Source of the DNA: Scyliorhinus canicula
Taxonomy: Eukaryota
DNA: 64,000 nt
Direction: 5' to 3'
Assembly: GCF_902713615.1 (NCBI RefSeq)
Contig: NC_052154.1
Coordinates: 80,641,072-80,705,071 of the forward strand
The notes below the pieces were generated by a model. It did no database searches and was not told the DNA's origin. It saw only the letters and a program-made list of their open reading frames with translations. Below are positions 6,682 to 33,870 of this stretch, piece by piece. Position 1 is the stretch's first letter; each line of letters starts with the position of its first letter. The translations under genes and the position numbers were made by a program.

Positions 6682-6736
6682 ATGTCTGGAAGAACCTCAC
6701 TTCGGCCCATCCTCATCCTGGCCCTTTCTTTCACAG
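6682..6736 (+). CDS. Exon 1: signal peptide MSGRTSLRPILILALSFT
   Basis: ATG with A at -3, basic N-region plus hydrophobic core, donor ag|gtactg, phase 1; 236-bp intron to the V exon. Confidence 0.85.
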
Positions 6737-9700
6737 GTACTGTGTCTTCAGTTTAACAACACAAATTAAGATCACAAAAATCATCAGAAAGTATGTAAGT
6801 TACATCGCAATTTAGAGCTTGGGTAGGTTTCTATTGTTCTTTACGTAGTTCCTCTGCTCTGGTATTAAAAAGGGCAATATTTCGAATTGTTGGCGGTTGT
6901 TTCCCCAAAAATATTCCACTTGCCCTCTTCCTCCCAGAAATAAATAATTTATTTTGTTTTTGTTTGTAATAGTAGCGGACACAGCCGACAGAGTGGGACA
7001 AATGCTTGATGTGAAAAATGCAATCGCAGGAGGGACGGTGAATTTTTACTGCATGTTCCCGCTGTTCAGGGACAAATCTAAAATCGCAGTGCAGTGGTGG
7101 AGAGGTGGCGAACGGGAATTCCTGAACCCGCAGGAACATCCCCGATTAAGCTTCCACATTGAGAGCAAAGCGAGCGCCATTCTGCGGATTCACAAAGTGC
7201 GCTTTGAAGATGCCGGATTTTATTATTGTAGAGTGCAGGGCGAAATTAAAGGGAATGGAACCGGGGAAGAGCTGACTGTGAGCGGTGAGTGACCTTTCAC
7301 AGCGACCGGGGAAACACAACAATGTAATTTACAAGTTATACCAATCGGGGCTACTTAGGGATCTGGGACAGAGGGATCGCGTCAGAAAAGGGCTGGGATG
7401 GACACAGCTAATTGCCGTTAATTTCTCACTTGTGACCTTCCATTCTGGTACATTTCCAGTGCACAGCTGGCCATTGCTTCCATTCTGGTACATTTCCAGT
7501 GCACAGCTGGCCATTGCTTCCATTCTGGCACATTTACAGTGCACAGCCGACCATTGCGACTGCGGTAGGAAGCTGGCAGAATTTGAGACATCGCGCACTG
7601 GACACGGGACGTCGGCGCTTTTGTTGCTGAAAGTTCAGAACAAAAAGGCAAAGACCCAGTATTGCGCAAAGCGGCTCCGTGCTCCGCTTTATTCTGCTAT
7701 TTCGTAATCATTTACTGCAGAAAAAACAAAGAAACAGAGACATAGAAAATAGGCGCAAGAGTAGGCCATTCGGCCCTTCGAGCCTGCATCACCATTCAAT
7801 ATGATCATGGCTGACCATAGCAAATTCAGTATCCCACTCCCACTTTCTCTCCATACACCTTGATCCCTTTAGCTGTGAGACCCACGCCCACCTCCCTCTT
7901 GATTATATCCACCTACCTGGCCCCAACACCTTTCTGTGGTAGATAATTCCACAAATTCACAACTTTTTGAGAGAAGAGGTTCTTCCTCAGCTCAGTCCTG
8001 AATGTCTTACCCCTTATTCTTCAGCTGTGACTTCTAGATCTGGACGTCCCCAACATTCATTTTAAATATGCATTTCACAATCTCCTCTAACAATTGCAAG
8101 GTGTCTATGTGGAATGTAACAAACGTTTGCTAATTTCTGTTACCTCCAGTCCAGTGAAATCACCCCATGTCAGTGAAATCATTATTACCTTCTGTATAAC
8201 TATCACCTCATGTCCAGTAAAATCACTACAGTATCACCTCATGTGCAATGAAATCATTAATAATAATCTTTCTTATTGTCACAAGTAGGCTTACATTAAT
8301 ACTGCAGTGAAGTTACTGGGAAAAGCCCCTATTCGCCACATTCCGGCGCCTGTTCAGGTGACCGGCACAGGAATTGAACCCGTGCTGCTGGCCTTGTTCT
8401 CCATTACAAACCAGCTGTCTAGCCCACTGAGCTAAACCAGCACAAATCCAGTGAAATCACCATCACCTCACATGCAGTGAAATCATTATCACCTCCTGTG
8501 TTACTGTCCCTCATGTCCAGTGAAATCACTCTCACCTCTTGTCCAGTGAAATCACTGTCGTCTCATGTGCAGTGAAATCACCATCGCCTCATGTGCAGTG
8601 AAATCACTCTCACCTCCGTCCAGTGAAACCACTAACTAATCCTTCAGCCTTGAATCGTTTATTTTTTGATCAAAATCCGCTATTTACAACGCGTTTAAAA
8701 CCTTTCATTTTTGTTAACTCCACCCCCCCCCCCCCCCCCCCCCCCACCTTTAAAAGGGTATTCTGGGGCTTTTAGAAATGAAAATTGCAGCCTTGGCAAC
8801 ATGGAAGTGTAAACCTTGTCCAAGGTTGCGGGTTGGAATCTTTTGTAGAATAAAAATGAAATTTGAAGATGTTAGAAATCTTCAGCCGGCCTCTGTGGTG
8901 AGAGAAGCGTGATTAACGTTGAGAATTGAATATGACTTTTACTTCGGAAGAAGATGAACGATATTTCCAAAGTTCTTGCTGATAATTTGGAGGCATTGTC
9001 AGCGGAACTGGGTTAAAAAAGGGTCTGATTAACATGGAAACTTTCGAGTGAAGAATTATTGACTTTACAGAATGTCGCGTATAATTTATCCCGTCAGGTT
9101 GACGGGATCTTAAATCATTGGGTGCCTGGAGCGAAATGGTTGCTTTGTTTGAACGAGTTTGCTCCAGTTATCCAATGAGTAGATTTCCCCAAAGACACAG
9201 TGCAATCCCAGTCGGGTCAGAAAGATTTTCTAGATGTGCAGCGGATTACAACCGGATTGTGATATCCCGCCGACTCGAGTTAGTATTGGATTCTGGAGCA
9301 TCTTCTGCCTTTGTGTGTTTTTAAAAAATGCTCCGATTATGTTATAAAATCCGGCGGACCCAACATGGTCCATTTTACACATTAGTGGGAAATTAAATGA
9401 CTCTGTAGTCAGAGGTACACCTTTGGAATAAGAGAGATGATAAGTGAATCGCCATGTCACACCTCTCCCAAGTTTTAATATTGATATCACCCGTTAAGCG
9501 CTATTGCCAAAATCACTCCCAGTCACCCTTAACTATTGTTGCGAATTATTAATTAAACTGCAATTTACTGGCTGTCCATTCCCCTGTGTTAACTGATCAT
9601 TTTGTTTGAAACTCACGGGCCACATATAAAGAATCACAGCACTAAACACCGAATTTCCAGCATTACACAGGAAAAACATCCTCTCTAAAAGGCGCGAAAG

Positions 9701-15700: not shown

Positions 15701-18700
15701 GCAAATTGGAAAGACCATCTAGCTTCCTGCTCCTAACCCTTATGGTAAGAAGTCTTACAACACCTGGTTAAAGTCCAACAGGTTTGTTTGGAATCACGAG
15801 CTTTCGGAGCATAGCCCCTTCATCAGGTGAGTCACCTGAAGAAGCAGCTACGCTCAGAAAGCCCGTGATTCCAAATATACCTGTTGGACTTTAGCCTGGT
15901 GTTGCAAGACTCCTTACTGTGCCCACCCCAGTCCAACGCCAGCATCTACTCATCATGGCTATCCCTTATGGTCACTGAATCCGTACTATGGGATTGTGTG
16001 TAAATGGTTTAATGTATTTAATTGAACTAGATTCACATGAAAGCAACAACAATGCTGTAATGCATAGCAACCAGCAATTTCCTCTTTTACGACCTTGTAA
16101 CAGCAAAATCTGCCATTACTTTAAAAAGATAGCAGCGTTACCTTTTAAGGAAGGGTTGATGCAACATGAAGAAGAGAATAGAGAGATTTAAGGCAGACTG
16201 GGAAGAAGGTCTTGAGGTGTATAAACACCAGCATAGACTAGCTTGGCCAAATGACTTGTTTCTGTGCTGTAGATTCAGTGCCGGATCTTCTATTGGGATG
16301 TTATATGTGGCAGCATACATTAAAGTTTGAAATTAGTGATTACCATTCTTGTTGAAACAATGGTGAGAATTCTCCAGTTGTCAGGATTCACTTTTCCCAC
16401 TGGCAACGCCCTCCCAGCAGCTGGTTTTGGGATGGGGTGGTTTCAATGGGAAATCCCATTGACAAGCGGTGGGAAGATAGAGAGTTGCCGCCAGCAAAAG
16501 GCACGGGTCCGAGAAACACACAGCTTGGGGACCAGGAAGCCTGTCCAATATTTTGGAAAAAAAGTCAGAATTAGCTTAAAGTTTTTATTGATCTCAGCTA
16601 ATTTGAATTTAAAACAACAGAATAGAATCTTAAAATGATTATGACACAAAAGGATATTCATAGGTAAAGTGCAACTGCAATATTGTGAAATGGTGCTCAG
16701 AGCAATATATCAGAAAATTATACCAACTTGGAAATTAAGAAATGCCTTTGTTTTTCATTTTTTCTATAGTTCCTCCAGATCCTCTGAAGATTTTACCAGT
16801 GTCCTCTGCAAATGGCTCTCTAACGTATCTGTGTCAAACTTCTGAGTTCTATCCTGATGCTTACAACCTTGTTTGGCTTAAAGATGGTAGACGCCTTACT
16901 GCTGGAGTAAAGACATACAGCAAGAAAAATGCCAAGGGACTATATGAAGTTTCCAGTTATTTGAAAGAACCACAGCCTGGTCCAGCTGGGACTGTTTATA
17001 TCTGTGAGGTATCTCACTCGACTCTTAAGATTCCAACTCGAGTCAGTTACACTGTTGAACTTGCAGGTAGGAACAACACCAGGTTATTTCCGATACATTG
17101 TATGTTGTGGTTTCACTGCAATTGATGGGAAATATTTTCACTGTAATAATGTCAGAAATGCAGTGAGTGCAGGGTGGTAATTTTTGAGAAATTGTGGAAT
17201 CAATAGAGCTGTTCGATAATGGCAAAGTGAATCAGCTGCAGCTCCTGAGCTCAGTGATGTGATTTTACTTCATTTTTGAATCTTACTAATCTTACGGAGC
17301 GTGCATTCCGTGGGATACCTCCGGCACCATCAAGATCTTCCATGCCTAGTTGACACCGCCGGGATTGAATGTTATTTGGTTAACTAAATGAAGCAGACGC
17401 GTGCACACATCCACACAAACCCATGTGCATCTATCACTGGAAATGAGTTAAGAATTTTGGCTGGTGTATTTTTTTATTCTCCTTGGAGGACTAGTATTGA
17501 GTCCATTTGTAGCACATAAACAGCTGCTGTCACTGGTTAACCTAACACAGGGCAGGATTTAACAAGGGTAGTAGTGAAAAGACTGAAGGAACAAGAATGC
17601 AAAAAAGACAGTCACACAGACCTGATAATGCATAGTGATTTATAGTCAGCAGTGGGTAACTGAACACTGTCAACCCAAGACAGACAATTTTAAAAATTAA
17701 TTTCCACAACGTGGGCATCACAAGAATATTTATTGTCCATCTTTAATTGTCCATGAGTCGGTGATGGTGAGTCACATTCTTGAATATCGCAGGCTTTCCA
17801 GTCTATACCAGAGACAGTTAATAGCTACATTTCACTGGGTCACATATGGATTAGCCTGGGTAAGGATGGCAAATTTCCTCTTGTATAGGACATTAGGGAA
17901 CCAGATGGGTTTTTATGACAATCCAAAAGTTACTTGGTCATCATCATTGATTTTAGATTTAATTAATTATATGAATTTTCTTTTTCCAGAATCTGTGGTG
18001 GTGTTATACCTCTGGATCATTAGACCATGCTTATGGGTTACGTCTCCACAATGCCACCATTACTCATTGTCACTGCCTGCCTTTTGAATTATGTGGTTAT
18101 GCTGGCGTTGGGCTGGGGTGAGCACAGTAAGACGTCTTACAACACCAGGTTAAAGTCCAACAGGTTTGTTTCTATCACTAGCTTTCGGAGCACTGCTCCT
18201 TCCATTCAACCGAGGAAGGAGCAGTGCTCCGAAAGCTAGTGATTTTAAACAAACCTGTTGGACTTTAACCTGGTGTTGTAAGACTTCTTACTGTGCCTTT
18301 TGAATGATTGAAATACAATTATTAGATCCTGGGTATTGAGGCCCACAAACGAGAAATAACATGGTAAATTGTTAATGGTAATTATAAAGGTTTAAGTTAT
18401 CTAGTGAGAGTAACACCGAAACATAGGACCAGGCAGCTGGCAGTCAAGGACATTGTCCATTCTGACTGTCTGCCACTCTTCTGTGGCTAGGTTTGCTGCA
18501 GAGTTTCCCTGGACGGGAGCAGGCATTCTGCGGGAGTCTGCTGGCCCCATAGATGTCTTCCATGCCCAGTTGGCACTGCCGGGATTGGGTGTCTGAAACA
18601 TGGTTGATTCACTACCCCATCAATTGTTTCCATGTCACCAGAAGTTCACTTGTTGGAGAGGTCAATGGACGATGGTCCTTCATGAGTTTCCATGTGAATG

Positions 18701-21700
18701 GACAACTCTGCCTTCCACACATCACAGTGACATGAGCAGTGATACCTTGCTGATATTGGCTTCCCTCTTTGTTCTGCACAAATTGTTTCACGACAAAGGG
18801 ATCTTAGAAAAGATAACCTAATATTTTAAAAATAGAATGAATTCTCATTGGTAGTAGCCTCCTGTTTTTCCTGTTCTTCTTTTTCTGAGGCCACAGACAT
18901 CTGCCACACCACCAGTACATCATCCATATGTAAATTTAGACACTGTCTGTTAGCCATTATTTAACCCACAGGAGCCAAGCAATTTAATCTATCCTCTCAG
19001 GTGGCTGTGAAATATTCCTTGACACTTTTGGAAGAAGAACAGTGTAGATTTTCCAGCGTCCTCGCCATCATTTATCTCAACCAAAACTGATGAATCAGCA
19101 AATAATTCGATTGGTGTTTTGGGGACCTCTCTGTCCATAAATTTGGGAAATCCGCGTGTGCTGCCGGCAAAGCAGAGGATCCCGCCGACAGAGAATCTGG
19201 ACCATTATATTTTTAATTTATGTTTGGGGGAATTTTATTGTGATCTGAACTAAATAGGTTTATGGAGAAGAACATTGGACGTTTTTTTCCATCGGCTGAT
19301 GCCGGAATCGCAATTGGGTGGAGAATTGGTTCCGATGCCGAAATCATGGCATGCGCCAATTATATGAGAAATTGCAATTCTCCGTTGCCTCTACAGTGGC
19401 ATCAATGTATTTCACAACACACATACAGTAAACACGATTTACATATAATTCGCGGGCGCAACCCAGAATTCTCTGGGGCGTTCATGAGTCTCTGCCTCCG
19501 ATGGGCCGAATTCCCAATGTGTTTCACATATGTTTTTAAAAATCATGAAACCGGTGTCGTGGATGCTGAGGGAGAGAAAGAGGGTACGGAAAGTGTCCAA
19601 TATTGCCATAGTTTGCGAATAGTTGTGCCAATGGCAGGGGGGCTTCTGCCTGGGCTGGGGGTGGGTTCGCAGGAGGTGGTCAAGAGGTGGGCCGTAGGGT
19701 CGGGGTGGATGGGCATGGAACACCATTGCCGCACCAACAAGGCAGCCATGCAGCGGCGCATGATGCTGACTGTCCACTGTGAACTTAGGGCCACAGGTCA
19801 TATGGGTGTCTCCCCAGGGCACTCCCCTAAGAACCCTCTGGCCCCAGCCAACCTATCAGCGGGATGGGCATGCTCCAGCACAACTAGTGCCACTTTATTG
19901 GCTGGGCTGAGTGTGTGTGGGCATTGTAATGTGTATATGCGGCTGCAGCTTGTCAGCCTAACGAGTGTCAATCACGGACCCAGCAAATCCGTACCGTTTT
20001 TCTTTGAAATCCATTGTGTTCCATGTGGTACTGATGGTACTCACCCCTCCACAATCAATGAATCACAGGTTCAGCGGCAGTTTTACTGTTGTGAAAATCG
20101 ATGAATCTTGCCCCGGCATCAAAACCTGGTCTCAGGAACGGAGAATCCAGTCCCTTTCCTTTGTCAAATATTTTCAAGTCCAATTGAAAACACAAAGACA
20201 CATAAAATAGGAGCAAGAATAGACTATAGAGCTCATATACAGCTCATAGAGCCTGTGCTGCCATTCAAAATGATCAAGATCGATCTTGGGTTCAACTCTA
20301 CCCGAGTAAGATGCCGAATAAAACGTGTTTAACTCCATGTTTAGAAGAGCACCATCAACTATAACCATGCCATCGTTTTCACTTCTTTTAGCCAAACTTT
20401 TGGATTGTTTAATTGATCTAACCTATTATTGTTAATCTGAACTGAATCATGGACAGTTTTGACCCATGTCGAGCAGGAGCAGATTAAGACTCTCACACTG
20501 GTGAGAAGCTTGTGAGTTGTAATTTTACGGGGTCAACAATCGTTATTCAAACTGTTTAATGTAGGAGCAGTAATTGTAATATTGGGTGTTTGTATTTGTG
20601 CAGGAAGATTACATTCATATTATCACCTATACTGAATGACTAGGTTTTATTCTGTATGTATCTTGCAGGCATTGATTCCAGTGGCTTTCTTGCTTGGTGG
20701 ATCTACCTCTGTGGAGCAATAGCTTTACTGCTTCTGATTATTGCACTGGTGCTTTGTTGTAAATTCTGTTGTTGCAAAAAACCTAAAGGTAAGGGAGCCA
20801 TCTTATTCCATTAATGGCTGAACTTCTAGATTTAATATTTATCAATTATAAAAATACAGAAATTATAATAAATTGAAAGAATATGTGAACTAATCTTATT
20901 CATCTGCAATAACTAAACCGTAGGATTAAAAATACTACTTCAATTCTTCAATGATATTTTATGCAATTTGAGCTCAGAAAGGTGAAGGATGTTAATTTTG
21001 TAGATTGGAACACTTCCCTTTTAGGCACCAAGGCTTTCCCGATTAGGTATAACATATCTAAAGTCAGGATGAAGTTCCTCCGACCCTCCTACAGAAATAT
21101 GGTACAATTTAGGGGTTGGATTTTCAATCGCCCATGAGGAGCAAGATTGGGTGTGGGTGCACTTTGAAAATGGTACACCTAGCTGGCGTGTTAATCTGTC
21201 AATGCTTCTCAAATATGTTTCAATATTCAAAACAAGAGTGAGGGTGGTAGAAACTGGCAACCTGTCAGCCTGCAATTAAGATAACATGGAATAGGAAGAG
21301 GAGTAGATCTTACTGCCCTTGAGTCTGCACCATCATTCAATATGATCATAGTTGACCTTGGGCTTCAACTCTGCTTTCCTGCCTGCTCCTCATATCCCTT
21401 GATCTCCTTCAGTTTTTTCTATGTTTCAATTAGTTACCTCTAATTTTTCTAAACTCCAGAAAAGATAGGCCTAATTTACCCAACCCTTTGTCCTTCATCT
21501 TCAGGGGCCAATTTAGTGACCACTCACCAGCACCTCCAATGCAAGTACATCCTTCCTAATATGTAGATTAAAGCTGCACAGTATTCCAGATGTGGTCTTG
21601 CCAAAGTTCGACAGTTGCAGCAAGTGGGTTTTAAGGCCCCACCATACAATTCCTATTGGGTGAGCTTCCGCCCGCTTAAAAGTGAAATTCATATTCCACG

Positions 21701-24700
21701 GGCAGATCTTTTGACAATCCTTTGTGGCGACCATAATAGCCCTCCCACCTCAAGTCCATTTCTCCCTTAGTACTCCCACGGTAAGGAGGTCTCTTCTGCA
21801 TTTTCGCAATCCGTCTGAAGTCCGTCGAGGGTGGAACTGGATCTGGAGGTGTGAACCGAATTGGAGATCTTCGCTTCCAGAGGGATCGTTGAAGAGTTGC
21901 TGACACGGGTTCCTCCTTGGTGCCTGCTTCAGTCGGAAGCCAGCTTCCTCTGCTTCCATCTTGGAATCCGAGTCCATGCTATTAGAGGAAATGGGTGCAG
22001 GATTCCCTTCTGGATGTTTCCCTACACTCGCGGCAGCCACCTCTGTGGCTGGTAGTGAGGCTTGTACAGGGATAGACCCCCCTACCTCTGAGATGGTCCC
22101 GGTGTTCCCTCATGATCTTACCCTGGTCCTTTACTTTGTAGGACATACTGGTTCCTTTTTCTCCATTATGACTTCAGGGATCCAGCTGGAGTCATCTTGG
22201 AGATTCTTCACATAGACCAGATCACCTGTCTTGAATATTCTTTCTGTTTACGCAGAACCATAATTTATTTTCTGGTTCTCTTGTTGGGACACCATCCTCC
22301 CTGCCAGGTTTGAGAATAGTTGGCTTAGTTTCGTGCAAAGCCGTCGGCCCATTAATCGTTCCACAAGGGAGATTCCTGTTGTTGTATGAGGAGTGGTCCT
22401 ACAATTGAATAAAAATCGTACCAATTTGGTCTTTATTGACAATGCCGGTTGTATTTTCATGCTGATTATAAAGGTTTGCACCGCCCATTCTTCCAGCCCA
22501 TTTGATGATGGGTGTTAAGGCACTGTTCTAATGTTTCTGAAACCATTAGATTGCGTGAAGCTTTGGAACTCACCACTGGTGACGGTATTGTCATTGTTGG
22601 AAACCAGGGTTTCCTGTATGACATGTGTGCACAAGCTCTGTCATAGTTTTTCGCTCGTAGAGTGGGAGGCCATGAAACCTATGTGGAGCGTGCATCTACC
22701 AGGATCAAAAATATGGAACCTATTAAAAGGCCCGGCAAAGTCCATGTGCACGTGAGCCCACAGCCTGCCTCCCACTCCCAAGGGTACAGGGAGCCTGAAG
22801 GAGGGACGTTCTAATTATCCTGGCATAAATCGCAGTGCTTCACCAAGTCTGTGATGTCTGAATCGAGACTGGGCCACCAGACATAGCTCTTGGTAAGCAT
22901 TTTCATTATAGATACCCCAGTGTGGCCATTATGTAGTTCCAGTCGAATTGGGCACCGTTCTGGGCAGGGGCCAACTACCTGAGACCCCACAGAATGATAC
23001 CATCCTCAACACTGAGTTCATATTTCTTGTTCAGATAAGATTTCGTTTCTTCAGGAGGTTGTCCTTGGATTCTGCCGTTCAGGATCGTGTGCTTCAATTT
23101 TGAGAGTCTTTTTGCACTCGAGTGTGGATTTGTTTTACTGGTAAATTCTCTAAAAATGTAAGGCCATCAAGACCTCTTCCAATGCTGACAGGGAGCCAGG
23201 CTATTGGGCATCGGGAGGCAAATCAAGTATAAACATTAGCTATTAACTTTCCTGGGCTGTGCTCTAATAGATATTCGTAAGCTGCAAGTAACATGGCCCA
23301 ACGTTGTATCTGGGCGGAGCCAAAGGGGAGGCGGGGGGGATTGCTTTATCCTCTTTAAAATGCCCCAATAAGGACTTGCGGTCTGTCACAATTAAAAATC
23401 CGTCTGCAGTAGAAGTATCGGGGAAATCTTTTTACACCAAACATGACAGCAATTCCCTCCTTCTCAATTTGAGAATACCTCAATGGATACCTCAGGGATG
23501 GTGCAGGCGGGAGGGATTCAGATTTCTGGATAACTGGGGCTCTTTCTGGGGAAGGTGGGACCTCTATAGACAGGATGGTCTACATCTGAACCTGAGGGGC
23601 ACCAATATCCTGGGGGGGAGATTTGTTAGTACTCTTTGGGGGGGTTTAAACTAATTCAGCAGGGGCATGGGAACCTGGATTGTAGTTTTGGGGTGCGAGA
23701 GATTGAGAGTAGAGAGGTCAGGAGCACAGTTTTGACTTCGCAGGAGGGCGGCAGTGTTCAGGTCTGTGGTTTGAAGTGTGTCTATTTCAATGCCAGGAGT
23801 ATACGAAATAAGGTAGGGGAACTGGCAGCATGGGTTGGTACCTGGGACTTCGATGTTGTGGCCATTTCGGAGACATGGATAGAGCAGGGACAGGAATGGT
23901 TGTTGCAGGTTCCGGGGTTTAGGTGCTTTAGTAAGGTCAGAGAAGGGGGCAAAAGAGGGGGAGGTGTGGCGCTGCTAGTCAAGGACAGTATTACGGTGGT
24001 AGAAAGGATGCAAGATGGGGACTCTTCTTCCGAGGTAGTATGGGCTGAGGTTAGAAACAGGAAAGGAGAGGTCACCCTGTTGGGAGTTTTCTATAGGCCA
24101 CCTAATAGTTCTAGAGATGTAGAGGAAAGGATGGCGAAGATGATTCTGGAAAAGAGCGAAAGTAACAGGGTAGTTGTTATGGGAGACTTTAACTTTCCTA
24201 ATATTGACTGGAAAAGATATAGTTCGAGTACATTGGATGGGTCGTTCTTTGTACAATATGTGCAGGAGGGTTTTCTGACACAATATGTTGACAGGCCAAC
24301 AAGAGGTGAGGCCACTTTGGATTTGGTTTTGGGTAATGAACCAGGCCAGGTGTTAGATCTGGAGGTAGGTGAACACTTTGGAGACAGTGACCACAATTCG
24401 GTAACCTTTACGTTAGTGATGGAAAGGGATAAGTATACCCCGCAGAGCAAGAGTTATAGCTGGGGGAAGGGCAATTATGATGCCATTAGACATGACTTAG
24501 GATGTGTTGGTTGGAGAAGTAGGCTGCAAGGGTTGGGCACACTGGATATGTGGAGCTTGTTCAAGGAACAGCTATTGCATGTTCTTGATAAGTACGTACC
24601 AGTCAGGCAGGGAGGAAGGGGTCGAGCGAGGGAACCGTGGTTTACCAAAGAAGTGGAATCTCTTGTTAAGAGGAAGAAGGAGGCCTATGTGAACATGAGG

Positions 24701-27700
24701 CGTGAAGTTTCAGTTGGGGCGCTTGATAGTTACAAGGAAGCGAGGAAGGATCTAAAGAGAGAGCTGAGACGAGCAAGGAGGGGACATGAGAAGTCTTTGG
24801 CAGGTAGGATCAAGGAAAACCCAAAAGCTTTCTATAGGTATGTCAGGAATAAAAGAATGACTAGGGTAAGAGTAGGGCCAGTCAAGGACAGTGGTGGGAA
24901 GTTGTGTGTGGAGGCTGAGGAGATAAGCGAGATACTAAATGAATACTTTTCGTCAGTATTCACTCAAGAAAAAGATAATATTGAGGAGGAGAATGCTGAG
25001 ACCCAGGCTATTAGAATAGATGGCATTGAGGTGCGTAGGGAAGAAGTGTTGGCAATTCTGGACAAGGTGAAAATAGATAAGTCCCCGGGGCCGGATGGGA
25101 TTTATCCTAGGATTCTCTGGGAAGCCAGGGAAGAGATTGCTGAGCCCTTGGCTTTGATTTTTAGGTCATCATTGGCTACAGGAATAGTGCCAGAGGACTG
25201 GAGGATAGCAAATGTGGTCCCTTTGTTCAAGAAGGGGAGTAGAGATAACCCCGGTAACTATAGGCCGGTGAGCCTAACGTCTGTGGTGGGTAAAGTCTTG
25301 GAGAGGATTATAAAAGATACGATTTATAATCATCTAGATAGGAATAATATGATTAGGGATAGTCAGCATGGTTTTGTGAAGGGTAGGTCATGCCTCACAA
25401 ACCTTATCGAGTTCTTTGAGAAGGTGACTGAACAGGTAGACGAGGGTAGAGCAGTTGATGTGGTGTATATGGATTTCAGTAAAGCGTTTGATAAGGTTCC
25501 CCACGGTCGGCTATTGCAGAAAATACGGAGGCTGGGGATTGAGGGTGATTTAGAGATGTGGATCAGAAATTGGCTAGTTGAAAGAAGACAGAGAGTGGTA
25601 GTTGATGGGAAATGTTCAGAATGGAGTTCAGTTACGAGTGGCGTACCACAAGGATCTGTTCTGGGGCCGTTGCTGTTTGTCATTTTTATAAATGACCTAG
25701 AGGAGGGCGCAGAAGGATGGGTGAGTAAATTTGCAGACGACACTAAAGTCGGTGGAGTTGTAGACAGTGCGGAAGGATGTTGCAGGTTACAGAGGGACAT
25801 AGATAAGCTGCAGAGCTGGGCTGAGAGGTGGCAAATGGAGTTTCATGTGGAGAAGTGTGAGGTGATTCACTTTGGAAAGAATAACAGGAATGCGGAATAT
25901 TTGGCTAATGGTAAAATTCTTGGTAGTGTGGATGAGCAGAGGGATCTCGGTGTCCATGTACATAGATCCCTGAAAGTTGCCACCCAGGTTGATAGGGTTG
26001 TGAAGAAGGCCTATGGTGTGTTGGCCTTTATTGGTAGAGGGATTGAGTTCCGGAGCCATGAGGTCATGATGCAGCTGTACCAAACTCTGGTACGGCCGCA
26101 TTTGGAGTATTGCGTACAGTTCTGGTCGCCTCATTATAGGAAGGACGTGGAAGCTTTGGAACGGGTGCAGAGGAGATTTACCAGGATGTTGCCTGGTATG
26201 GAGGGAAAATCTTATGAGGAAAGGCTGATGGACTTGAGGTTGTTTTCGTTAGAGAGAAGAAGGTTAAGAGGTGACTTAATAGAGGCATACAAAATGATCA
26301 GAGGGTTAGATAGGGTGGACAGCGAGAGCCTTCTCCCGCGGATGGAGGTGGCTAGCACGAGGGGACATAGCCTTAAATTGAGGGGTAATAGATATAGGAC
26401 AGAGGTCAGAGGTGAGTTTTTTACGCAAAGAGTGGTGAGGCCGTGGAATGCCCTACCTGCAACAGTAGTGAACTCGCCAACATTGAGGGCATTTAAAAAT
26501 TTATTGGATAAGCATATGGATGATAAGGGCATAGTGTAGGTTAGATGGCCTTTAGTTTTTTTTTTCCATGTCGGTGCAACATCGAGGGCCGAAGGGCCTG
26601 TACTGCGCTGTATCGTTCTAACCTTCTAAATCCACTTGGCATCCAAGAGAGTGCTGGATGCACAGCAATGGGCCTTTCTGTCCAGCAGTGTGAAAGTACC
26701 TCCCAACCCCGTAAGGGAAAGCAAAACGTGTCAGGATGAGTTCCTTTTAGAGGTTGAAATGGGCCAATAAATTGGACACATTAGCTGCCCTTTTACGTTC
26801 TCGAGGGCCTCCTCCTGTGGCGCCCACCAAGATCATTTCTGGCACTTTCGCAGTAGTATGGAGACAGGAGACAGCAAGGAGGCCAAATTCGGGATAAACC
26901 TCCTGTAATAATTTACTAATCCCAGGAAGGATTTCAATTACATTGTATTTCTTGGAGTTGTTGTTTCCTGATGGCTATTGCCTTGTCTTCCACTGTGCGT
27001 AGCCCCTTTTTTCTCCACCCAATAACCCAAATAGATCACTTTGCTTGCTTGGAAAACAATTTTCCTCTTTTCTGATGTGTACCAGCTTTTGAAAATCACT
27101 GCCAGACTTCTAAGTTTGCCAGGTGCTCTCGTCTGAAGTCGCCATCAGCAGAACGTCATCCAAGTACACTGGCATTTTAGGGAACCCTTGGAGTATGTTC
27201 TCCATCATCCGTTGGAATGTGGTGCATGCCGATGAGACCCCAAAAGGCAAGCGAGTATACTCAGAGAAGCCCTTATCCATGTTGATTTTAACATGTTTAG
27301 GGGAAGGCTTGTCTAATTGAAGATGAAGATAGGTGTGGCTCCTATCTAGCTTAGTGACTGTCTGGCCACCTGGTTTTTGTCTATTCACGGCAAGGGGTAC
27401 TCATCCAGTTTGGAAAGCAGGTTGACCATTAATCATAAGCTTAGAATTCCCACAGGGATGGAGCAATTTGTCCTGTTTAGAACATAGATCATAGAACATA
27501 GAACAGTACAGCACAGAACAGGCCCTTCGGCCCTCAATGTTGTGCCGAGCCATGATCACCCCACTTAAACCCACGTAACCCGCAACCCAACAATCCCCCC
27601 ATTAACCTTACACTACGGGCAATTTAGCATGGCCAATCCACCTAACCCGCACATCTTTGGACTGTGGGAGGAAACCGGAGCACCCGGAGGAAACCCACGC

Positions 27701-30700: not shown

Positions 30701-31669
30701 ACGCAGACACGGGGAGAACGTGCAGACTCCACACAGACAGTGATCCAAGTCGAGAATCAAACCCAGGTCCCTGGCGCTTTGAAGTAACAATGCTAATCAC
30801 TGTAGCTACTGTGCTGCCCCAATGTTAATGGAGCTGGTTTAGCACACTGGGCTAAATAGCTGGCTTTGAAAGCAGACCAAGGCAGGCCAGCAGCACGGTT
30901 CAATTCCCGTACCAGCCTCCCCGAACAGGCGCTGGAATGTGGCAACTAGGGGTTTTCACAATAACTTCATTTGAAGCCTACTTGTGATAATAAGTGATTT
31001 TAATTCATTTCATTTTATTAATGCTGTTGAATGTCAAAGGGAAATAGTTATAATCTCTCTTGTTAGAGATGGTCTTGCATCAAGGTTACTTGCCACTTAT
31101 CAGCTGAGTCTGAATGTAAAATTAAAACGTTCCCCCTTTTACAGCCTAAAGTATTGGTATCTGGTTTGTAGGTTAAGGTACACATTGGCTAGATTTTCTG
31201 ATCTACAATATACTTTATCAGACTATTGTAGTTTTATGGCATCTCTAATACTATTTCAATTTCATATTCTGTGTCTATTTTGCTTCAGTGGAGTGGTTGA
31301 TTCCGTAATGTATAGTTTTATGATGAATATGATGACTTATTTTAAGCAATAGATTAATTCAATAATTTGACAAATAGAAACTTCCTGTTCAATGCCACTT
31401 CAATGCTGACTCAACAGGGTATTCCAGCATTTTTGAACTCTTATATTTCATGCGTTTTTCTTACAGCTCGTGAACGCAAAATTCAAATGAGGCAATGTGT
31501 TCGCTGCTTTGAGCCAATAGTGCAAAATCCTAAATGCAAAGAACAAGAAGCAAAGAAAGTCAATACTCAGACACCACAGAGGAACACAAGTAAAGTAGAA
31601 AAAGCTAACAAAACCTCATCACAGCGCAAGAAACATCATAAGAGAGATAAGGACCCCGTGCTTGCCTGA
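6682..31669 (+). CDS. Five-exon IgSF type I membrane protein: leader, IgV (VJ-type), IgC1, TM, cytoplasmic tail; 328 aa; NKp30/SIRP/VJC1-like, orthology unresolved
   Basis: Exons 6682-6736, 6973-7284, 16770-17066, 20669-20788, 31467-31669 (55+312+297+120+203 = 987 nt) join in frame through four GT-AG phase-1 introns, the usual IgSF pattern. Confidence 0.85.
6973..7284 (+). CDS. Exon 2: Ig V-set domain with J-like G strand
   Basis: B-strand VNFYC, C-strand VQWWR, F-strand EDAGFYYC, G-strand GNGTGEELTVS; T-rich acceptor ending aatag, donor g|gtgagt. Confidence 0.95.
7441..7560. repeat. 40-bp tandem repeat, 3 copies
   Basis: cattctggtacatttccagtgcacagctggccattgcttc twice identical, then one diverged copy. 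Confidence 0.95.
7738..8055 (-). mobile_element. CR1 LINE 3'-end fragment
   Basis: catagaaaataggcgcaagagtaggccattcggcccttcgagcc is the reverse complement of a CR1 3' UTR; degenerate RT C-terminus follows. Confidence 0.75.
8145..8635. repeat. Degenerate 25-27-bp minisatellite (about 11 copies of cagtgaaatcac core), interrupted by a type C SINE at about 8259-8441
   Basis: Repeated (t)cacctcatgt(c/g)cagtgaaatcac on both sides of the SINE. Confidence 0.85.
10181..10488 (+). mobile_element. SINE type B (type A head, different body, gtgacaataaagattatta tail)
   Basis: Near-identical to 12712-13020, and to 30505-30820 and 42025-42240 on the minus strand. Confidence 0.85.
10785..11043 (-). mobile_element. 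Short V-SINE-like element (type A', ends gcccc ttaattggaaaa)
   Basis: Same family as 29182-29400, 33300-33870 and 56654-56881. Confidence 0.8.
11060..14600 (-). mobile_element. Decayed CR1 LINE fragments (RT, then endonuclease region) with inserted SINEs at about 11400-11570 (+), 12712-13020 (+) and 13505-13838 (-)
   Basis: CR1 tail taagaacataag; reverse-strand remnants such as DLVLCNENELI and degenerate CR1 ORF2 motifs. Confidence 0.65.
14600..14880 (+). mobile_element. Ancient degenerate DeuSINE (SacSINE1/AmnSINE1-like)
   Basis: gtgtcctggctaacaaatatccctccaac resembles the Deu-domain core as I recall it; tail gcaaagtgctttggatcattgtgaaag; second fragment at about 19010-19140. Confidence 0.5.
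15747..15962. mobile_element. Palindromic Penelope-like-element (PLE)-derived non-autonomous element, copy 1, with hammerhead motif
   Basis: Arms 15745-15830 and 15832-15917 are inverted repeats; flanked by 10-bp direct repeat cccttatggt (15737-15746, 15963-15972). Confidence 0.8.
15794..15830 (-). ncRNA. Minimal type I hammerhead ribozyme motif
   Basis: Minus strand reads TCAC-CTGATGA-A-GGGGC-TAT-GCTCC-GAAA-GC-TC-GTGA: stem I UCAC/GUGA, CUGANGA core, 5-bp stem II, GAAA, palindromic AGCU helix III, CUC cleavage triplet. Confidence 0.65.
16365..16570. mobile_element. Degenerate short MITE with Harbinger-like termini
   Basis: Begins tggtgagaattctcc, internal aatgggaaatcccattg; related fragments at about 19140-19203 and 33985-34030. 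Confidence 0.4.
16770..17066 (+). CDS. Exon 3: Ig C1-set domain
   Basis: LTYLCQTSEFYPDAYNLVWLKDG (C-x4-FYP...W) and YICEVSH (C1 signature Y-x-C-x-V-x-H); acceptor tttctatag, donor g|gtagga. Confidence 0.95.
18090..18293. mobile_element. Palindromic PLE-derived element, copy 2 (opposite orientation to copy 1)
   Basis: Arms 18122-18203 and 18214-18296 are near-perfect inverted repeats; 12-bp direct repeat tgccttttgaat at 18078-18089 and 18294-18305. Confidence 0.8.
19277..20154. mobile_element. Non-autonomous Harbinger derivative (MITE, about 0.88 kb)
   Basis: Left part is homologous to 44288-44570; right part is homologous to 48230-48454 and 63570-63806; ends ggagaatccagtccc. Confidence 0.75.
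20669..20788 (+). CDS. Exon 4: transmembrane segment and Cys-rich juxtamembrane (GIDSSGFLAWWIYLCGAIALLLLIIALVLCCKFCCCKKPK)
   Basis: Acceptor tcttgcag, donor g|gtaagg, phase 1-1; more than 20 hydrophobic residues followed by a basic stop-transfer segment. Confidence 0.92.
21700..23490 (-). pseudogene. Gypsy pol remnant, RNase H (3' half) and integrase
   Basis: Reverse strand reads YSQIEKEG..., HMDFAGPF, HPSSNGL.E.AVQTF and FLFNCRTTPHTTTGISLVERLMGRRL; purine-rich PPT-like stretch near 21750. Confidence 0.8.
23493..26620 (+). mobile_element. Young CR1 LINE, 5'-truncated within ORF1 (esterase C-terminus), with complete ORF2 and 3' tail
   Basis: ORF1 end GWCRREGFRFLDNWGSFWGRWDLYRQDGLHLN; tail gagggccgaagggcctgtactgcgctgtatcgttcta. 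Confidence 0.95.
23636..26539 (+). CDS. CR1 ORF2: APE endonuclease plus reverse transcriptase, uninterrupted
   Basis: 967-codon ORF: YFNARSIRNK, AISETW, GDFN, SDHN (APE); KSPGPDG, QHGFVKGRSCLTNL, DFSKAFD, GVPQGSVLGPLLF, FADD (RT). True start codon is uncertain. Confidence 0.95.
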   Translation: MGGFKLIQQGHGNLDCSFGVREIESREVRSTVLTSQEGGSVQVCGLKCVYFNARSIRNKVGELAAWVGTWDFDVVAISETWIEQGQEWLLQVPGFRCFSKVREGGKRGGGVALLVKDSITVVERMQDGDSSSEVVWAEVRNRKGEVTLLGVFYRPPNSSRDVEERMAKMILEKSESNRVVVMGDFNFPNIDWKRYSSSTLDGSFFVQYVQEGFLTQYVDRPTRGEATLDLVLGNEPGQVLDLEVGEHFGDSDHNSVTFTLVMERDKYTPQSKSYSWGKGNYDAIRHDLGCVGWRSRLQGLGTLDMWSLFKEQLLHVLDKYVPVRQGGRGRAREPWFTKEVESLVKRKKEAYVNMRREVSVGALDSYKEARKDLKRELRRARRGHEKSLAGRIKENPKAFYRYVRNKRMTRVRVGPVKDSGGKLCVEAEEISEILNEYFSSVFTQEKDNIEEENAETQAIRIDGIEVRREEVLAILDKVKIDKSPGPDGIYPRILWEAREEIAEPLALIFRSSLATGIVPEDWRIANVVPLFKKGSRDNPGNYRPVSLTSVVGKVLERIIKDTIYNHLDRNNMIRDSQHGFVKGRSCLTNLIEFFEKVTEQVDEGRAVDVVYMDFSKAFDKVPHGRLLQKIRRLGIEGDLEMWIRNWLVERRQRVVVDGKCSEWSSVTSGVPQGSVLGPLLFVIFINDLEEGAEGWVSKFADDTKVGGVVDSAEGCCRLQRDIDKLQSWAERWQMEFHVEKCEVIHFGKNNRNAEYLANGKILGSVDEQRDLGVHVHRSLKVATQVDRVVKKAYGVLAFIGRGIEFRSHEVMMQLYQTLVRPHLEYCVQFWSPHYRKDVEALERVQRRFTRMLPGMEGKSYEERLMDLRLFSLERRRLRGDLIEAYKMIRGLDRVDSESLLPRMEVASTRGHSLKLRGNRYRTEVRGEFFTQRVVRPWNALPATVVNSPTLRAFKNLLDKHMDDKGIV
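26621..27480 (-). pseudogene. Gypsy pol remnant, protease, RT and RNase H 5' half
   Basis: Reverse strand reads YTRLPFGVSSACTTFQRMMENILQG..VYLDDVL; degenerate ELIL.(D)A.PYGVG and RP.A..S.TL next to the CR1 tail. Confidence 0.8.
27481..27814 (-). mobile_element. Full-length V-SINE-like element (type A2) whose tail matches the adjacent CR1 3' end
   Basis: Tail gagggccgaagggcctgttctgtgctgtactgttctatgttct versus CR1 gagggccgaagggcctgtactgcgctgtatcgttcta. Confidence 0.88.
27815..28092. mobile_element. Right half of a Harbinger-type MITE
   Basis: Homologous to 57290-57545 (gttgacgcc...aaacac...gtgtttac...caacacttagcc); ends agagaaacccgctcc. Confidence 0.6.
29090..29965. mobile_element. Cluster of four V-SINE copies or fragments in mixed orientation
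   Basis: (-) tail 29090-29180, (+) 29182-29400, (+) 29399-29745, (-) 29750-29965. Confidence 0.8.
29985..30500 (-). mobile_element. Old non-LTR retrotransposon RT C-terminal remnant
   Basis: Reverse strand LTPQSLLNIYKARVKSVTQFPPLAWMSVAPSSSKKLDTIQDK resembles LINE RT thumb sequence; clade not resolved. Confidence 0.55.
30505..31010. mobile_element. Head-to-head SINEs: type B (-, 30505-30820) and type C (+, 30830-31010)
   Basis: Both share the body gaacaggcgc(c/t)ggaatgtgg...tagggg..ttttcaca. Confidence 0.8.
31467..31669 (+). CDS. Exon 5: terminal cytoplasmic exon (A)RERKIQMRQCVRCFEP...RKKHHKRDKDPVLA*
   Basis: Strong acceptor gcgtttttcttacag, phase 1 compatible with exon 4; followed by about 1 kb of repeat-free AT-rich sequence with poly(A) signals. 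An unseen small intermediate exon cannot be excluded. Confidence 0.72.
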
Positions 31670-32630
31670 TGGTGGAAAAATAAATCTGAAAAGTATTTTG
31701 TGACAATCATAGTTCTCTTTAAAGAACTACCTTCATTGCATACTTCATAAATGAGTGAACAAGAGAATTCGAACATCATAAAATTACTGCATTTAACCAT
31801 ATTTGTTCACTCATAAAACATTATTTCTGATCTGTGAATTAATATTTCTGAATTGAGAATATTTATATCTGATCACTTTTGGTACTTATGACAGGGCCCT
31901 CGGAAGGGTGTTCATATTTCACCGAAGATTGTTGTGAGAAAATTAATTTCTGAAGGATTCCACATGTGGGAAAGTGTGATAAAAGCAAGTATAACTCAAT
32001 TCCAGTACTCCAGCCACACTCAGCCAGAGAAACCTTTGTGTCTATTCACTTACTGTTTATAGAATAAATTGCCTCTTTCATATCCCGTATATGGAATTTG
32101 AATCCACCCATTGACAACCAGGATATAACATTTCCCTCTCCATTTGTACCCTTTCTATGGAATACAAGGCCATATTGGTATCTGATTGGAGCAATCTCCA
32201 ATTTGTGTGCGAGTTAGTATAAAATGGGTGATAGGGAATCAACACACTGCTTTACATCTCTTCTAATTTTTTATCCACCCCACTATGCAGAATTTTAATG
32301 CCTATATCCATCTAATACATTACATTTTATTGGCTCTTTATTTAACTGCTGTTTCAGGTACTGTACATTTCATAACATTGCAGTGCCCTAGTCACATACA
32401 CTATGTAGAATTTTCATTTCCTTTTTACAGTCAGTGGACTGAATTCCAATTCTGATTCATACTATCGCACAGAATTCTTGTTCTCATTTGTATCCATTGT
32501 CCAGAATTCTGTATCATTTATTTCTAGTTTGCAGGGTTCCAGTTTATATCCAATTTCCATTATAATCTCTGTCAATATGTTTAATCATATTCTAAACTTA
32601 CATTATGCAAGTGCTTATCTTGTTATGTAA

Positions 32631-32644
32631 AATAAAGCAATAAA
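32631..32644 (+). terminator. Tandem AATAAA poly(A) signals, probable gene end (further AATAAA at 31679 and 32063)
   Basis: aataaagcaataaaa at the end of the repeat-free putative 3' UTR. Confidence 0.5.
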
Positions 32645-33299
32645 AGTGTACTAACGTAAAAGTGGTAGAAGCTGTGGGACAACCAGGTAACATTTAAAAT
32701 AATAAGAGGCCTAATTGGAGTAATTAGGGACAACCTACTTATTTTTAGCAGAGGGATCAAAAACCAAAGACCATGGATTTAAAGTCATTGGTAGAAGGTT
32801 GAGGAGGGAGATGAGGAAACATTTTTTCACCGAGAGGATGGTAAGGCTGTTGGAATCACTGCCTAAAGGAGTGATAGAGGCAGAAACTCACAACGCATTA
32901 AAAAATATCTGAATGTCTACTTGAAGTGATGTGCTACAGGACAAGTGCACGAAGGTGGAATTAGGCTGGGTAACTCTTTAATGATTGACACAGACAAGAT
33001 GGACCGAATGGCCTCCTCTGTGTTGTACATGTTCTATGAGTCTGTTTTTATTAATCTCATATTCCAGTGACTGTCGAGAATAAGTTATTTACCTGCATCA
33101 TATACCATTTGTTATAAAGGACTGTGTTCTAAATATATACTTTTGTCTGATACTGTTACGATAATTGATCTAAAAAAATATATACAACAAATTCCTTTGG
33201 TTAAAAAATGTGCAAATGGTGAAGTACAGTAAAAGAGGTCACACCAGTTTATTGGTTGCATTAAATAGTCCCTCAGAGGCTTGTGCTACTACGTATTTT

Positions 33300-33870
33300 G
33301 GAATTAAAAATAAAATAAAAATTTAGAGTACCCAATTATTTTTTTCTCCAATTAAGGGGCAATTTAGTGTGGCCAGTCCACGTAACCTGCACATCTTTGG
33401 GTTGTGGGGGTGAAACCCCACAGACATGTGGACAATGTGCAAACTAGAAGAAGGTTAAGAAGTGACTTAATTGAGGCATACAAGATGATCAGAGGATCAG
33501 ATAGGGTGGACAGTGAGAGCCTTTTTCCTCGGTTGGTGATGGCTAGCACGAGGGGACATAGCTTTAAATTGAGGGGAGATAGATATAGGACAGATGTCAG
33601 AGGTAGGTTCTTTACTCAGAGAGTAGGTAAGGGCGCAAAATGCCCTGCCTGAAACAGTAGTGGACTCACCGACATTAAGGGCATTTAAATGGTAATTGGA
33701 TAAACATATGGATGATAAGGGAATAGTGTCGATGGGTTTTAGATTGGTTTCACAGGACGGCGCAACATCGAGGGCCGAAGGGCCTGTACTGCTCTGTACT
33801 GTTCTATGTTGTTCCACTCGGACAGTGACCCAAGGCCGGGATTCGAACCTGGGTCTTCAGCACCACATGC
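33300..33870. mobile_element. Type A' SINE (-) interrupted by a short 3' fragment of the young CR1 (+, about 33446-33810)
   Basis: SINE sequence gtgcaaact|ccactcggacagtgaccc is split by RRRLRSDLIEAYKMIRG..., which is near-identical to 26255-26620. Confidence 0.85.

What the first reader, a model, noticed from the sequence alone, without database searches (positions are those of the whole stretch)
6682..31669. Non-rearranging, antigen-receptor-like V(J)-C1-TM gene with an unusual signalling module
Seen: a complete five-exon, all-phase-1, 328-aa ORF: leader, V domain, C1 domain, TM and a tyrosine-free tail. Established: C1-set domains are largely confined to adaptive-immunity molecules (Ig, TCR, MHC, beta-2-microglobulin, tapasin, SIRP, B7-H6 and relatives). 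Germline VJ-C1 genes (PRARP/VJC1-type) have been proposed as relics of the pre-RAG antigen-receptor precursor. Here the TM has no Lys/Arg/Asp (unlike NKp30, SIRP-beta or TCR chains) and the tail has no ITIM/ITAM (unlike SIRP-alpha). Inference: in a cartilaginous fish this may be an uncharacterised member of the antigen-receptor-precursor-like lineage that signals in a CD4/CD8-like or adaptor-independent way.
Basis: partly seen in the sequence, partly recalled or inferred. Interest (0 to 1): 0.8.

Follow-up and report, generated by a model that had tools for sequence, protein, structure and literature searches.

The report
Conserved shark V-C1 surface receptor gene
This is a real, expressed catshark gene for a membrane protein whose outside looks like one non-rearranging antibody or T-cell-receptor chain. 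It is already in the public annotation and belongs to a large shark, ray and chimaera gene family, but its conserved tyrosine-free, cysteine-rich, basic tail sets it apart and its function is unknown.

Summary
The five phase-1 exons (6682-6736, 6973-7284, 16770-17066, 20669-20788, 31467-31669) splice to 987 nt and 328 aa. That product is identical to RefSeq XP_038662966.1 of Scyliorhinus canicula. Spliced contigs from four public runs show junctions 2-3, 3-4 and 4-5 directly.

The domains are a V domain with a built-in J motif, one C1-set domain, an uncharged membrane span and a 74-residue tail. The tail has no tyrosine and a net charge of +15.

No characterised orthologue was found, and automatic names disagree (SIRP-alpha-like, B7-H6-like, Ig lambda-like, CD276, tapasin-like). 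But the gene is not a lone relic. It is the single-copy, chimaera-to-shark conserved member of a large VJ-C1 receptor family. Every family member whose source I looked up was from a cartilaginous fish. Most paralogues carry ITIM-like tails and lie on the same chromosome.

This scan had already noted family members on other DNA of the same genome: 78 kb upstream, 435 kb downstream and on other chromosomes.

The tail is about as conserved as the ectodomain. Its invariant parts are WW.Y.C at the start of the membrane span, C.RC, and a KH inside a basic C-terminal run. Five other species have annotated isoforms that skip the membrane-span exon.

CD4/CD8-like signalling stays speculative. MHC-paralogon linkage was not established.

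The parts
6682..6736 (+). Exon 1: start codon and 18-residue leader (MSGRTSLRPILILALSFT), ending in phase 1
   Evidence: The leader is conserved in the orthologues. Identical to RefSeq isoform X1.
6973..7284 (+). Exon 2: V-type Ig domain with a germline-joined J segment (Cys45-Cys104, WW at 60-61)
   Evidence: Pfam V-set 9.8e-8. AF2 pLDDT above 90. The end of this exon is joined to exon 3 in an RNA contig.
7251..7280 (+). J-like G-strand motif GNGTGEELTV. The family consensus NGTG(S/T)xLxV matches xGxGTxLxV. It also holds an N-glycosylation sequon.
   Evidence: N, G and G are invariant or nearly invariant across 32 family V domains.
16770..17066 (+). Exon 3: C1-set Ig domain (Cys144-Cys201)
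   Evidence: Pfam C1-set 1.4e-9. PDB sequence hits to Ig lambda C, UrIg2 and B7-H6. Structural match to the HLA-DQ C1 domain, Z 15.1, rmsd 1.1 A.
20669..20788 (+). Exon 4: short stalk, uncharged membrane span (WWIYLC...) and juxtamembrane cysteine cluster CCKFCCC. It is 120 nt, so skipping it keeps the reading frame.
   Evidence: Helix 231-255 in the model. The joint to exon 3 is present in four runs. Isoforms lacking this exon are annotated in five other species.
31467..31669 (+). Exon 5, coding part: basic, tyrosine-free cytoplasmic tail and stop codon
   Evidence: The start of this exon follows exon 4 in an RNA contig. Tail identity tracks ectodomain identity.
31496..31507 (+). Codons for the invariant tail motif C-V-R-C (C.RC in all 11 orthologues aligned)
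31670..33321 (+). Probable long 3' UTR. Its end is inferred and was not mapped.
   Evidence: The 2797-nt contig of run X5 has 1854 nt beyond exon 4. AATAAA lies at 33309, and also at 31679.

Best explanation
Shown: this is the small-spotted catshark gene for XP_038662966.1, a type I membrane glycoprotein. Its parts are a leader, a non-rearranging VJ-type V domain, one C1-set domain, an uncharged membrane span and a 74-residue tail. It is the catshark orthologue of a gene present once per species in sharks, rays and a chimaera. That gene forms its own branch of a large VJ-C1 receptor family whose looked-up members are all from cartilaginous fish; the other members mostly carry ITIM-like tyrosine motifs. 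Inferred: the V domain faces outward and binds a conserved partner, because this subfamily follows the species tree and stays single-copy. The C1 domain acts as the membrane-proximal spacer. The tail does not signal through ITIM or ITAM motifs, nor through a charged-span adaptor. Instead it probably lies against the inner membrane leaflet, held by palmitoylation of the CCKFCCC cluster and by its net +15 charge. It would then offer short conserved motifs (C.RC and the basic KKHxKR-type C-terminus) to an unidentified cytoplasmic partner. In-frame skipping of the 120-nt membrane-span exon, annotated in five other species, would give a secreted form. In function it would be the 'third class' member of a paired-receptor cluster, in the way SIRP-gamma stands beside SIRP-alpha and SIRP-beta, but with a long constrained tail.
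For: Gene model and splicing. Domains. Family and orthologues: the exhaustive V-domain search, named hits, cluster look-ups and the maximum-likelihood tree, in which the C.RC-tail genes form one species-tree-like clade (sharks 99/97, plus rays 91/79, plus chimaera 91/81). Tail conservation about equal to the ectodomain, with invariant WW.Y.C, C.RC and KH. No Tyr in the tail, no charged residue in the span, net charge +15. Isoforms without the membrane-span exon in Hemiscyllium, Chiloscyllium, Heterodontus, Heptranchias and Callorhinchus. Paralogues with ITIM-like tails on the same chromosome-scale contigs.
Against: Every functional step is inference. No ligand, no expressing cell type and no binding partner is known, and palmitoylation is predicted from sequence only. 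The tail is predicted disordered (pLDDT about 40). Exon-4 skipping was not seen in the catshark contigs shown. The homodimer prediction gave no verdict. Relatives in bony vertebrates cannot be excluded: the word-indexed searches are insensitive, and only about 45 of the family-like hits were looked up by name.
Confidence: 0.6

Rival explanations
1. It is a B7-H6 (NCR3LG1)-type ligand rather than a receptor: a V-C1 membrane protein shown on cells and read by NKp30/NCR3-family receptors. The basic tail would be an anchor like those of B7 ligands (that B7 tails are short and basic is my own knowledge, not tested here).
For: NCBI names several orthologues 'NCR3LG1-like'. Human B7-H6 matches the C1 exon at 1.6e-8 over the longest stretch. 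It is also the best immune two-domain structural match: 4zso_E, Z 15.7, 192 residues aligned, 26% identity. Q68D85 is among the Swiss-Prot fold hits.
Against: The Z-scores are tied with Rst/Neph1, BTN, PD-L2 and others. Human B7-H6 is not among the 60 best PDB matches of the V exon. The V domain has a canonical J motif, and the same family includes members with ITIM-like tails, which are receptor features. The tail is far more conserved than a plain anchor needs.
Confidence: 0.2
2. It is an antigen-receptor-precursor-like chain that signals as a co-receptor. The conserved C.RC, and in many sharks a third cysteine, would form a zinc clasp with a Src-family kinase, as CD4 and CD8-alpha do with Lck.
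For: VJ-C1 architecture. C.RC is invariant over the chimaera-elasmobranch split. There is no other signalling motif.
Against: The motif is CxxC, not the CxC of CD4 and CD8 (my own knowledge). The third cysteine is missing in Heptranchias, Hemiscyllium, the rays and Callorhinchus. No test of binding was possible. The family's closest fold matches are B7, BTN and SIRP as much as Ig chains.
Confidence: 0.1
3. It is a member of the PRARP or NKp30/NCR3 lineages already described, so it is a known gene under another name.
For: PRARP and NKp30 are cited as non-rearranging VJ genes (PMC10751288). Nurse-shark NCR3 family genes exist (MT914154-61, cited in PMC12227049). The J motif and the 'YxCRV' F strand recall NKp30 (from memory only).
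Against: PRARP is reported from bony vertebrates, from my recollection of Fu 2019, which is not held here. No non-chondrichthyan was found among the family-like hits I looked up. NKp30 chains are not among the best 60 PDB matches of the V exon or of the V profile. The white-shark NCR3 genes lie in the MHC on chromosome 19 between AIF1 and DDAH2. The longest of them spans 21,268 bp, shorter than the 22,280-bp coding span of this gene's white-shark orthologue. NKp30 has no C1 domain (my own knowledge).
Confidence: 0.08

Closest known systems
VJ-C1 receptor family of cartilaginous fish (annotated only under automatic names such as SIRP-alpha-like, NCR3LG1-like, tapasin-related-like)
   Same: Same exon plan, same V hallmarks (FPLF..WWK.GE.EFL, YYC, NGTG.xLxV) and the same C1 hallmarks. 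Members lie on the same chromosome-scale contigs in each species checked.
   Different: This subfamily has no tyrosine motif and no charged span. It has a conserved C.RC and basic tail, one copy per species, and a species-tree-like phylogeny.
B7-H6 / NCR3LG1 (and B7/butyrophilin ligands in general)
   Same: Leader-V-C-TM-tail plan. B7-H6 has a C1-type domain that matches at 1.6e-8. It is the best immune two-domain fold match, Z 15.7, 26% identity.
   Different: The V domain here carries a canonical J motif. The family includes members with ITIM-like tails. The V exon shows no significant match to B7-H6 among the top PDB hits.
SIRP family (alpha, beta, gamma)
   Same: A V domain followed by C1-set domains. 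A cluster that mixes inhibitory, possibly activating and motif-less members. Fold hits to SIRP-alpha and SIRP-gamma.
   Different: SIRPs have two C1 domains. SIRP-gamma has a very short tail (my own knowledge). Here there is one C1 domain and a long conserved tail.
UrIg / UrIg2 (non-rearranging shark VJ plus C1 genes; PMC12227049)
   Same: A single-exon VJ, C1-type constant domains and no rearrangement. UrIg2 is a top PDB sequence hit for the C1 exon (2.9e-13 over three domains).
   Different: UrIg has three C domains and is secreted. Nurse-shark UrIg2 has nine C domains. They are linked to the MHC and to the Ig/TCR complex respectively. Here there is one C1 domain plus a membrane span, and the gene sits in a different cluster.
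PRARP (Fu et al. 2019, J Immunol 202:1992; paper not held here)
   Same: A non-rearranging VJ plus C domain, membrane span and tail, proposed as a remnant of an antigen-receptor precursor (cited in PMC10751288).
   Different: PRARP tails are recalled to hold ITIMs, and the family is reported from bony vertebrates.

Membership tests
Rearranging antigen receptors (Ig/TCR) | V and J are separate gene segments flanked by RSS heptamer and nonamer | tested here: not met
   V and the J motif lie in one exon that ends at a GT donor. No CACAGTG, CACTGTG or nonamer occurs in 6901-7400.
Rearranging antigen receptors (Ig/TCR) | A VJ-type V domain followed by a C1-set domain | tested here: met
   Pfam V-set and C1-set. 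The family V profile aligns end to end with Ig light-chain V regions including J. Foldseek top hits are light chains.
VJ-C1 receptor family of cartilaginous fish | Shared V and C1 sequence hallmarks and exon plan, with significant full-length similarity | tested here: met
   33-41% identity to paralogues at E 1e-40 to 1e-55. Family HMM scores. Alignments A1-A3.
C.RC-tail subfamily (this gene's orthologue group) | A single-copy clade that follows the species tree, with WW.Y.C in the span, C.RC and a basic C-terminus | tested here: met
   Tree. Tail alignment of 11 species.
B7-H6 / NCR3LG1 | Orthology to B7H6 and binding to NKp30 | tested here: inconclusive
   C1 match 1.6e-8 and fold Z 15.7 with 26% identity, but tied with many other IgSF pairs. 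No V match in the top 60. No reference tree could be built. Binding cannot be tested with these tools.
SIRP | V followed by two C1-set domains | tested here: not met
   There is one C1 exon only. RNA contigs join it directly to the membrane-span exon. No further Ig exon lies in the window.
UrIg / UrIg2 | VJ plus three or more C1-type domains; secreted, or membrane-bound with a long C array | tested here: not met
   One C1 domain. UrIg features are taken from PMC12227049.
NKp30 / NCR3 | A single V domain with no C domain, and MHC class III linkage | tested here: not met
   A C1 domain is present. The white-shark NCR3 genes lie on chromosome 19 between AIF1 and DDAH2, and none is long enough to hold this gene's white-shark orthologue, whose coding span is 22,280 bp. 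NKp30 is absent from the best 60 PDB hits.
PRARP | Sequence orthology to chicken PRARP1/2, and ITIM-bearing tails | not testable with these tools
   The paper and its sequences are not held. The tail has no tyrosine.
CD4/CD8-type kinase-coupled co-receptors | A cytoplasmic CxC motif that binds Lck through a zinc clasp | not testable with these tools
   The tail has an invariant C.RC (CxxC), not CxC. No binding test was possible.

The most novel reading that the evidence does not exclude
The slowly evolving, single-copy C.RC-tail gene would be an antigen-receptor-like chain (VJ-C1) wired to a cytoplasmic kinase or other partner through a palmitoylated, zinc-binding cysteine motif, not through ITIM/ITAM motifs or charged-span adaptors. 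That would be a CD4/CD8-style coupling on a non-rearranging receptor, conserved since before sharks and chimaeras split, with a secreted splice form as a soluble counterpart.
Probability: 0.07. Interest if true: 0.85.

Novelty: new variant of a known kind. Interest (0 to 1): 0.45.

Why it matters
Non-rearranging VJ-C1 genes are the closest living models of the gene that the RAG transposon is thought to have split (PMC12227049, PMC10751288). This one shows that cartilaginous fish keep a whole family of one-C1 membrane forms alongside UrIg and UrIg2. Within that family one member has stayed single-copy with a constrained, unusual tail since before sharks and chimaeras split. That makes it a tractable candidate for asking what such receptors bind and how they signalled before, or beside, ITAM-coupled antigen receptors. 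It also shows that the automatic names in databases (SIRP-alpha-like, B7-H6-like, Ig lambda-like, tapasin-like) are unreliable for this family.

Tried and rejected
- Homodimer prediction of the ectodomain (P0201 residues 19-226, two copies) gave no verdict (score 0.00). It is not evidence either way.
- A C1-region search of the 5.8-billion-protein index found only three orthologues, because the word index is too strict.
- Profile searches of PDB with the family V and C1 alignments were dominated by multi-domain proteins and antibodies. They could not rank NKp30, SIRP or B7-H6.
- The term 'PRARP' in the paper library gave only unrelated papers. Fu 2019, Ohta 2019, Flajnik 2012 and 2023, Ohta and Flajnik 2015 and Kinlein 2021 are not held.
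- The look-up of encoding contigs returned no DNA and no coordinates for the catshark or white-shark genes. The chromosome number and the neighbours could therefore not be read.
- Pseudogene or mis-modelled gene is rejected: the ORF is intact, spliced RNA contigs exist and the RefSeq model is identical.
- Extra exons carrying ITIMs are rejected: exon 4 is followed directly by the start of exon 5 in the RNA contig that runs past it, and exon 5 holds the stop codon.
- Isoform X3 (P0202, a 268-aa frameshifted short tail) could not be explained by a canonical splice site and was not followed up.
Full report
**1. The observation**

I read the five proposed exons directly and spliced them by script. 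The exons are 6682-6736, 6973-7284, 16770-17066, 20669-20788 and 31467-31669, all on the + strand. Every intron is GT..AG and phase 1. The coding sequence is 987 nt and gives 328 aa.

Pfam calls exon 2 a V-set domain (9.8e-8) and exon 3 a C1-set domain (1.4e-9). The whole protein gives C1-set 3e-11. The disulphide pairs are Cys45-Cys104 and Cys144-Cys201. The membrane span (LAWWIYLCGAIALLLLIIALVL) has no charged residue. The last tyrosine is Y234, inside the span. The 74-residue tail has 22 Lys+Arg against 7 Asp+Glu.

The V exon runs through a J-like G strand (GNGTGEELTV, 7251-7280) to its splice donor. No RSS heptamer or nonamer is nearby. tblastn of the product against the window finds no other related exon.

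**2. Transcription**

The C1 exon is held by contigs of 18 public runs from 7 studies. I laid four of them on window:16300-21300: three studies of organism A and one of organism B.

- All four carry the joint 17066|20669 with GT..AG ends.
- One contig (run X1) runs on upstream of 16769 into ..GGAACCGGGGAAGAGCTGACTGTGAGC, which is the end of exon 2.
- The same run's contig runs on downstream of 20788 into CTCGTGAACGCAAAATTC.., which is the start of exon 5.
- Intron bins have zero depth except over repeats.

These are therefore spliced RNA contigs, and three of the four junctions are seen directly. One contig has 1854 nt beyond exon 4. This fits a long 3' UTR ending near the AATAAA at 33309. Junction 1-2 is supported only indirectly.

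**3. Identity**

An exhaustive phmmer search with the V exon against 1.84 billion representatives found a set of single-V proteins of about 320 aa. Word-indexed searches and cluster look-ups gave their names.

P0201 (XP_038662966.1, 'tyrosine-protein phosphatase non-receptor type substrate 1-like isoform X1', Scyliorhinus canicula) equals my spliced product exactly. The window is therefore small-spotted catshark, and the gene is already annotated.

Orthologues with the same tail occur in these species (identity to the catshark protein in brackets):

- S. torazame (88%)
- Mustelus (73%)
- Carcharodon (66%)
- Heterodontus (62%)
- Heptranchias (55%)
- Hemiscyllium (55%) and Stegostoma (54%), with Chiloscyllium plagiosum known only from its shorter isoform
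- the stingray Hemitrygon (45%), with Hypanus in the same 90% cluster
- the electric ray Narcine (a partial model)
- Callorhinchus (38%)

Their automatic names disagree: Ig lambda-like, NCR3LG1-like, CD276 homologue, SIRP-alpha-like, tapasin-like. This shows that no characterised orthologue guided the naming.

**4. The family**

Many further hits share the V hallmarks (FPLF..WWK.GE.EFL, YYC, NGTG.xLxV) and the C1 hallmarks. Their tails differ, and many carry ITIM-like motifs such as LTYAAL. Some lack the C1 domain altogether.

Every family-like hit that I looked up is from a shark, ray or chimaera. In Callorhinchus the locus numbers are adjacent: LOC103185890, LOC103185896 and LOC103185897.

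I built a maximum-likelihood tree of V+C1 from 44 members. It puts all C.RC-tail genes in one clade with one gene per species. The branching follows the species tree: sharks 99/97, plus rays 91/79, plus chimaera 91/81. The sister pair is Heptranchias P0020 and S. torazame P0175 (94/91).

The gene is thus a one-to-one orthologue group that predates the chimaera-elasmobranch split, inside a family that otherwise shows lineage-specific copies.

**5. The tail**

Domain-by-domain identity shows that the tail is about as conserved as the ectodomain:

| Species | Tail | V domain | C1 domain |
|---|---|---|---|
| Heptranchias | 50% | 52% | 58% |
| Stingrays | 39-41% | 46-47% | 45-46% |
| Callorhinchus | 32% | 41% | 38% |

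The invariant elements are WW.Y.C at the start of the span, C.RC, and a KH inside a basic C-terminal run. A juxtamembrane cysteine cluster is also present in all species.

The AlphaFold2 model has V and C1 at pLDDT above 90, a membrane helix at 231-255 and a disordered tail. Conservation of a disordered region points to short linear motifs.

Annotated isoforms in five other species lack exactly the membrane-span exon. In catshark that exon is 120 nt, so skipping it would keep the frame and give a secreted form. I did not see this form in the catshark contigs shown.

**6. What it resembles**

By sequence, the C1 exon is nearest to Ig lambda constant domains among solved structures. Shark UrIg2 and human B7-H6 also match. 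The V exon is nearest to pIgR domains and to antibody V regions, weakly.

By fold:

- Foldseek against PDB returns antibody light chains.
- Foldseek against Swiss-Prot models returns BTN2A2, SIRP-alpha, CD276, PD-L1, NCR3LG1 and Ig lambda.
- A search not biased by redundancy gives Rst/Neph1 D1-D2, B7-H6 (Z 15.7, 26% identity), BTN, PD-L2, UrIg2 (Z 14.0) and SIRP-gamma (Z 13.2). These scores span less than 3 Z units.
- In that same search the C1 domain alone superposes on the HLA-DQ C1 domain at 1.1 A.

The architecture is therefore shared by antigen-receptor chains, SIRPs and B7/butyrophilin ligands, and fold alone does not decide between them. The canonical J motif and the true C1-set domain justify the label 'VJ-C1'.

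**7. Genomic context**

The rest of the window is transposon debris: LINE reverse transcriptases and a Harbinger-type DDE fragment. Synteny cannot be read from it.

The catshark MHC is on chromosome 13. The MHC paralogons are on chromosomes 4, 16, 17, 21 and 25 (PMC10751288 supplement). The white-shark NCR3 cluster is on chromosome 19 between AIF1 and DDAH2.

My gene lies on a 198.8-Mb chromosome whose number I could not obtain. The scan's index places notes on MHC class III and NKp30-like genes of this genome on other pieces.

Earlier notes of this scan, which I did not check, report family members 78 kb upstream (next to OGFOD1) and 435 kb downstream, and a B7-H6-like gene 78 Mb away. I did confirm that catshark paralogues sit on the same 198.8-Mb contig.

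**8. Mechanism**

Shown: a transcribed, conserved type I membrane protein with a VJ-C1 ectodomain, no ITIM or ITAM and no charged span.

Inferred: it binds a conserved partner through its V domain. Its tail is held at the inner leaflet by palmitoylated cysteines and by its positive charge. The tail presents conserved motifs to an unknown partner. A secreted form may arise by exon skipping.

Rivals:

- A B7-H6-type ligand (0.2).
- A CD4/CD8-like kinase-coupled co-receptor (0.1). The motif is CxxC, not CxC, and the third cysteine is not conserved.
- Identity with a described PRARP or NCR3 lineage (0.08). The key papers are not held, so this remains open.

**9. Verdict**

It overstates the uniqueness of the gene, and its proposal on signalling is unsupported.

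The gene is a distinct, conserved variant within a known kind, the non-rearranging VJ-C1 IgSF receptors. This scan has met that kind repeatedly in this genome.

Noticed in passing
window 23636-26539 (+), inside intron 4: An uninterrupted 967-aa LINE ORF2 (endonuclease plus reverse transcriptase; Exo_endo_phos 1.5e-20, RVT_1 1.1e-35). It lies in the same orientation as the host gene and may be a recently active element.
   Followed up: partly
window 36320-38571 (-) and 24-2574 (+), 54371-55651 (+): Several copies or fragments of another non-LTR retrotransposon family. They include a 595-aa ORF holding the RVT_1 C-terminal half (1e-09), which shares long conserved C-terminal segments with the other ORFs.
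   Followed up: partly
window 42602-42937 (-): A fragment of a Harbinger/PIF-type transposase (DDE_Tnp_4, 1.2e-9).
   Followed up: partly
window 18108-18296 (intron 3): A short stretch with very high summed contig depth in all four RNA-like runs, with many different flanks. It behaves as an abundantly transcribed SINE-like repeat.
   Followed up: no
window 15737-15972 (intron 2): An earlier first-reader note (s1-240228) reports a hairpin retroelement with back-to-back hammerhead ribozymes here. I did not examine it.
   Followed up: no
P0202 (XP_038662969.1), exon 4/5 junction at 20788|31467: RefSeq isoform X3 reads exon 5 in another frame (..KKPK LVNAKFK stop), as if the last G of exon 4 were missing. 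No canonical splice site explains it.
   Followed up: partly
P0020 (Heptranchias) and P0175 (S. torazame): The sister paralogues of the C.RC clade keep the WWIY.C span and a related basic C-terminus, but P0020 still carries tyrosines (MVYTAI, AVYATP). This hints that the C.RC lineage lost tyrosine motifs.
   Followed up: partly
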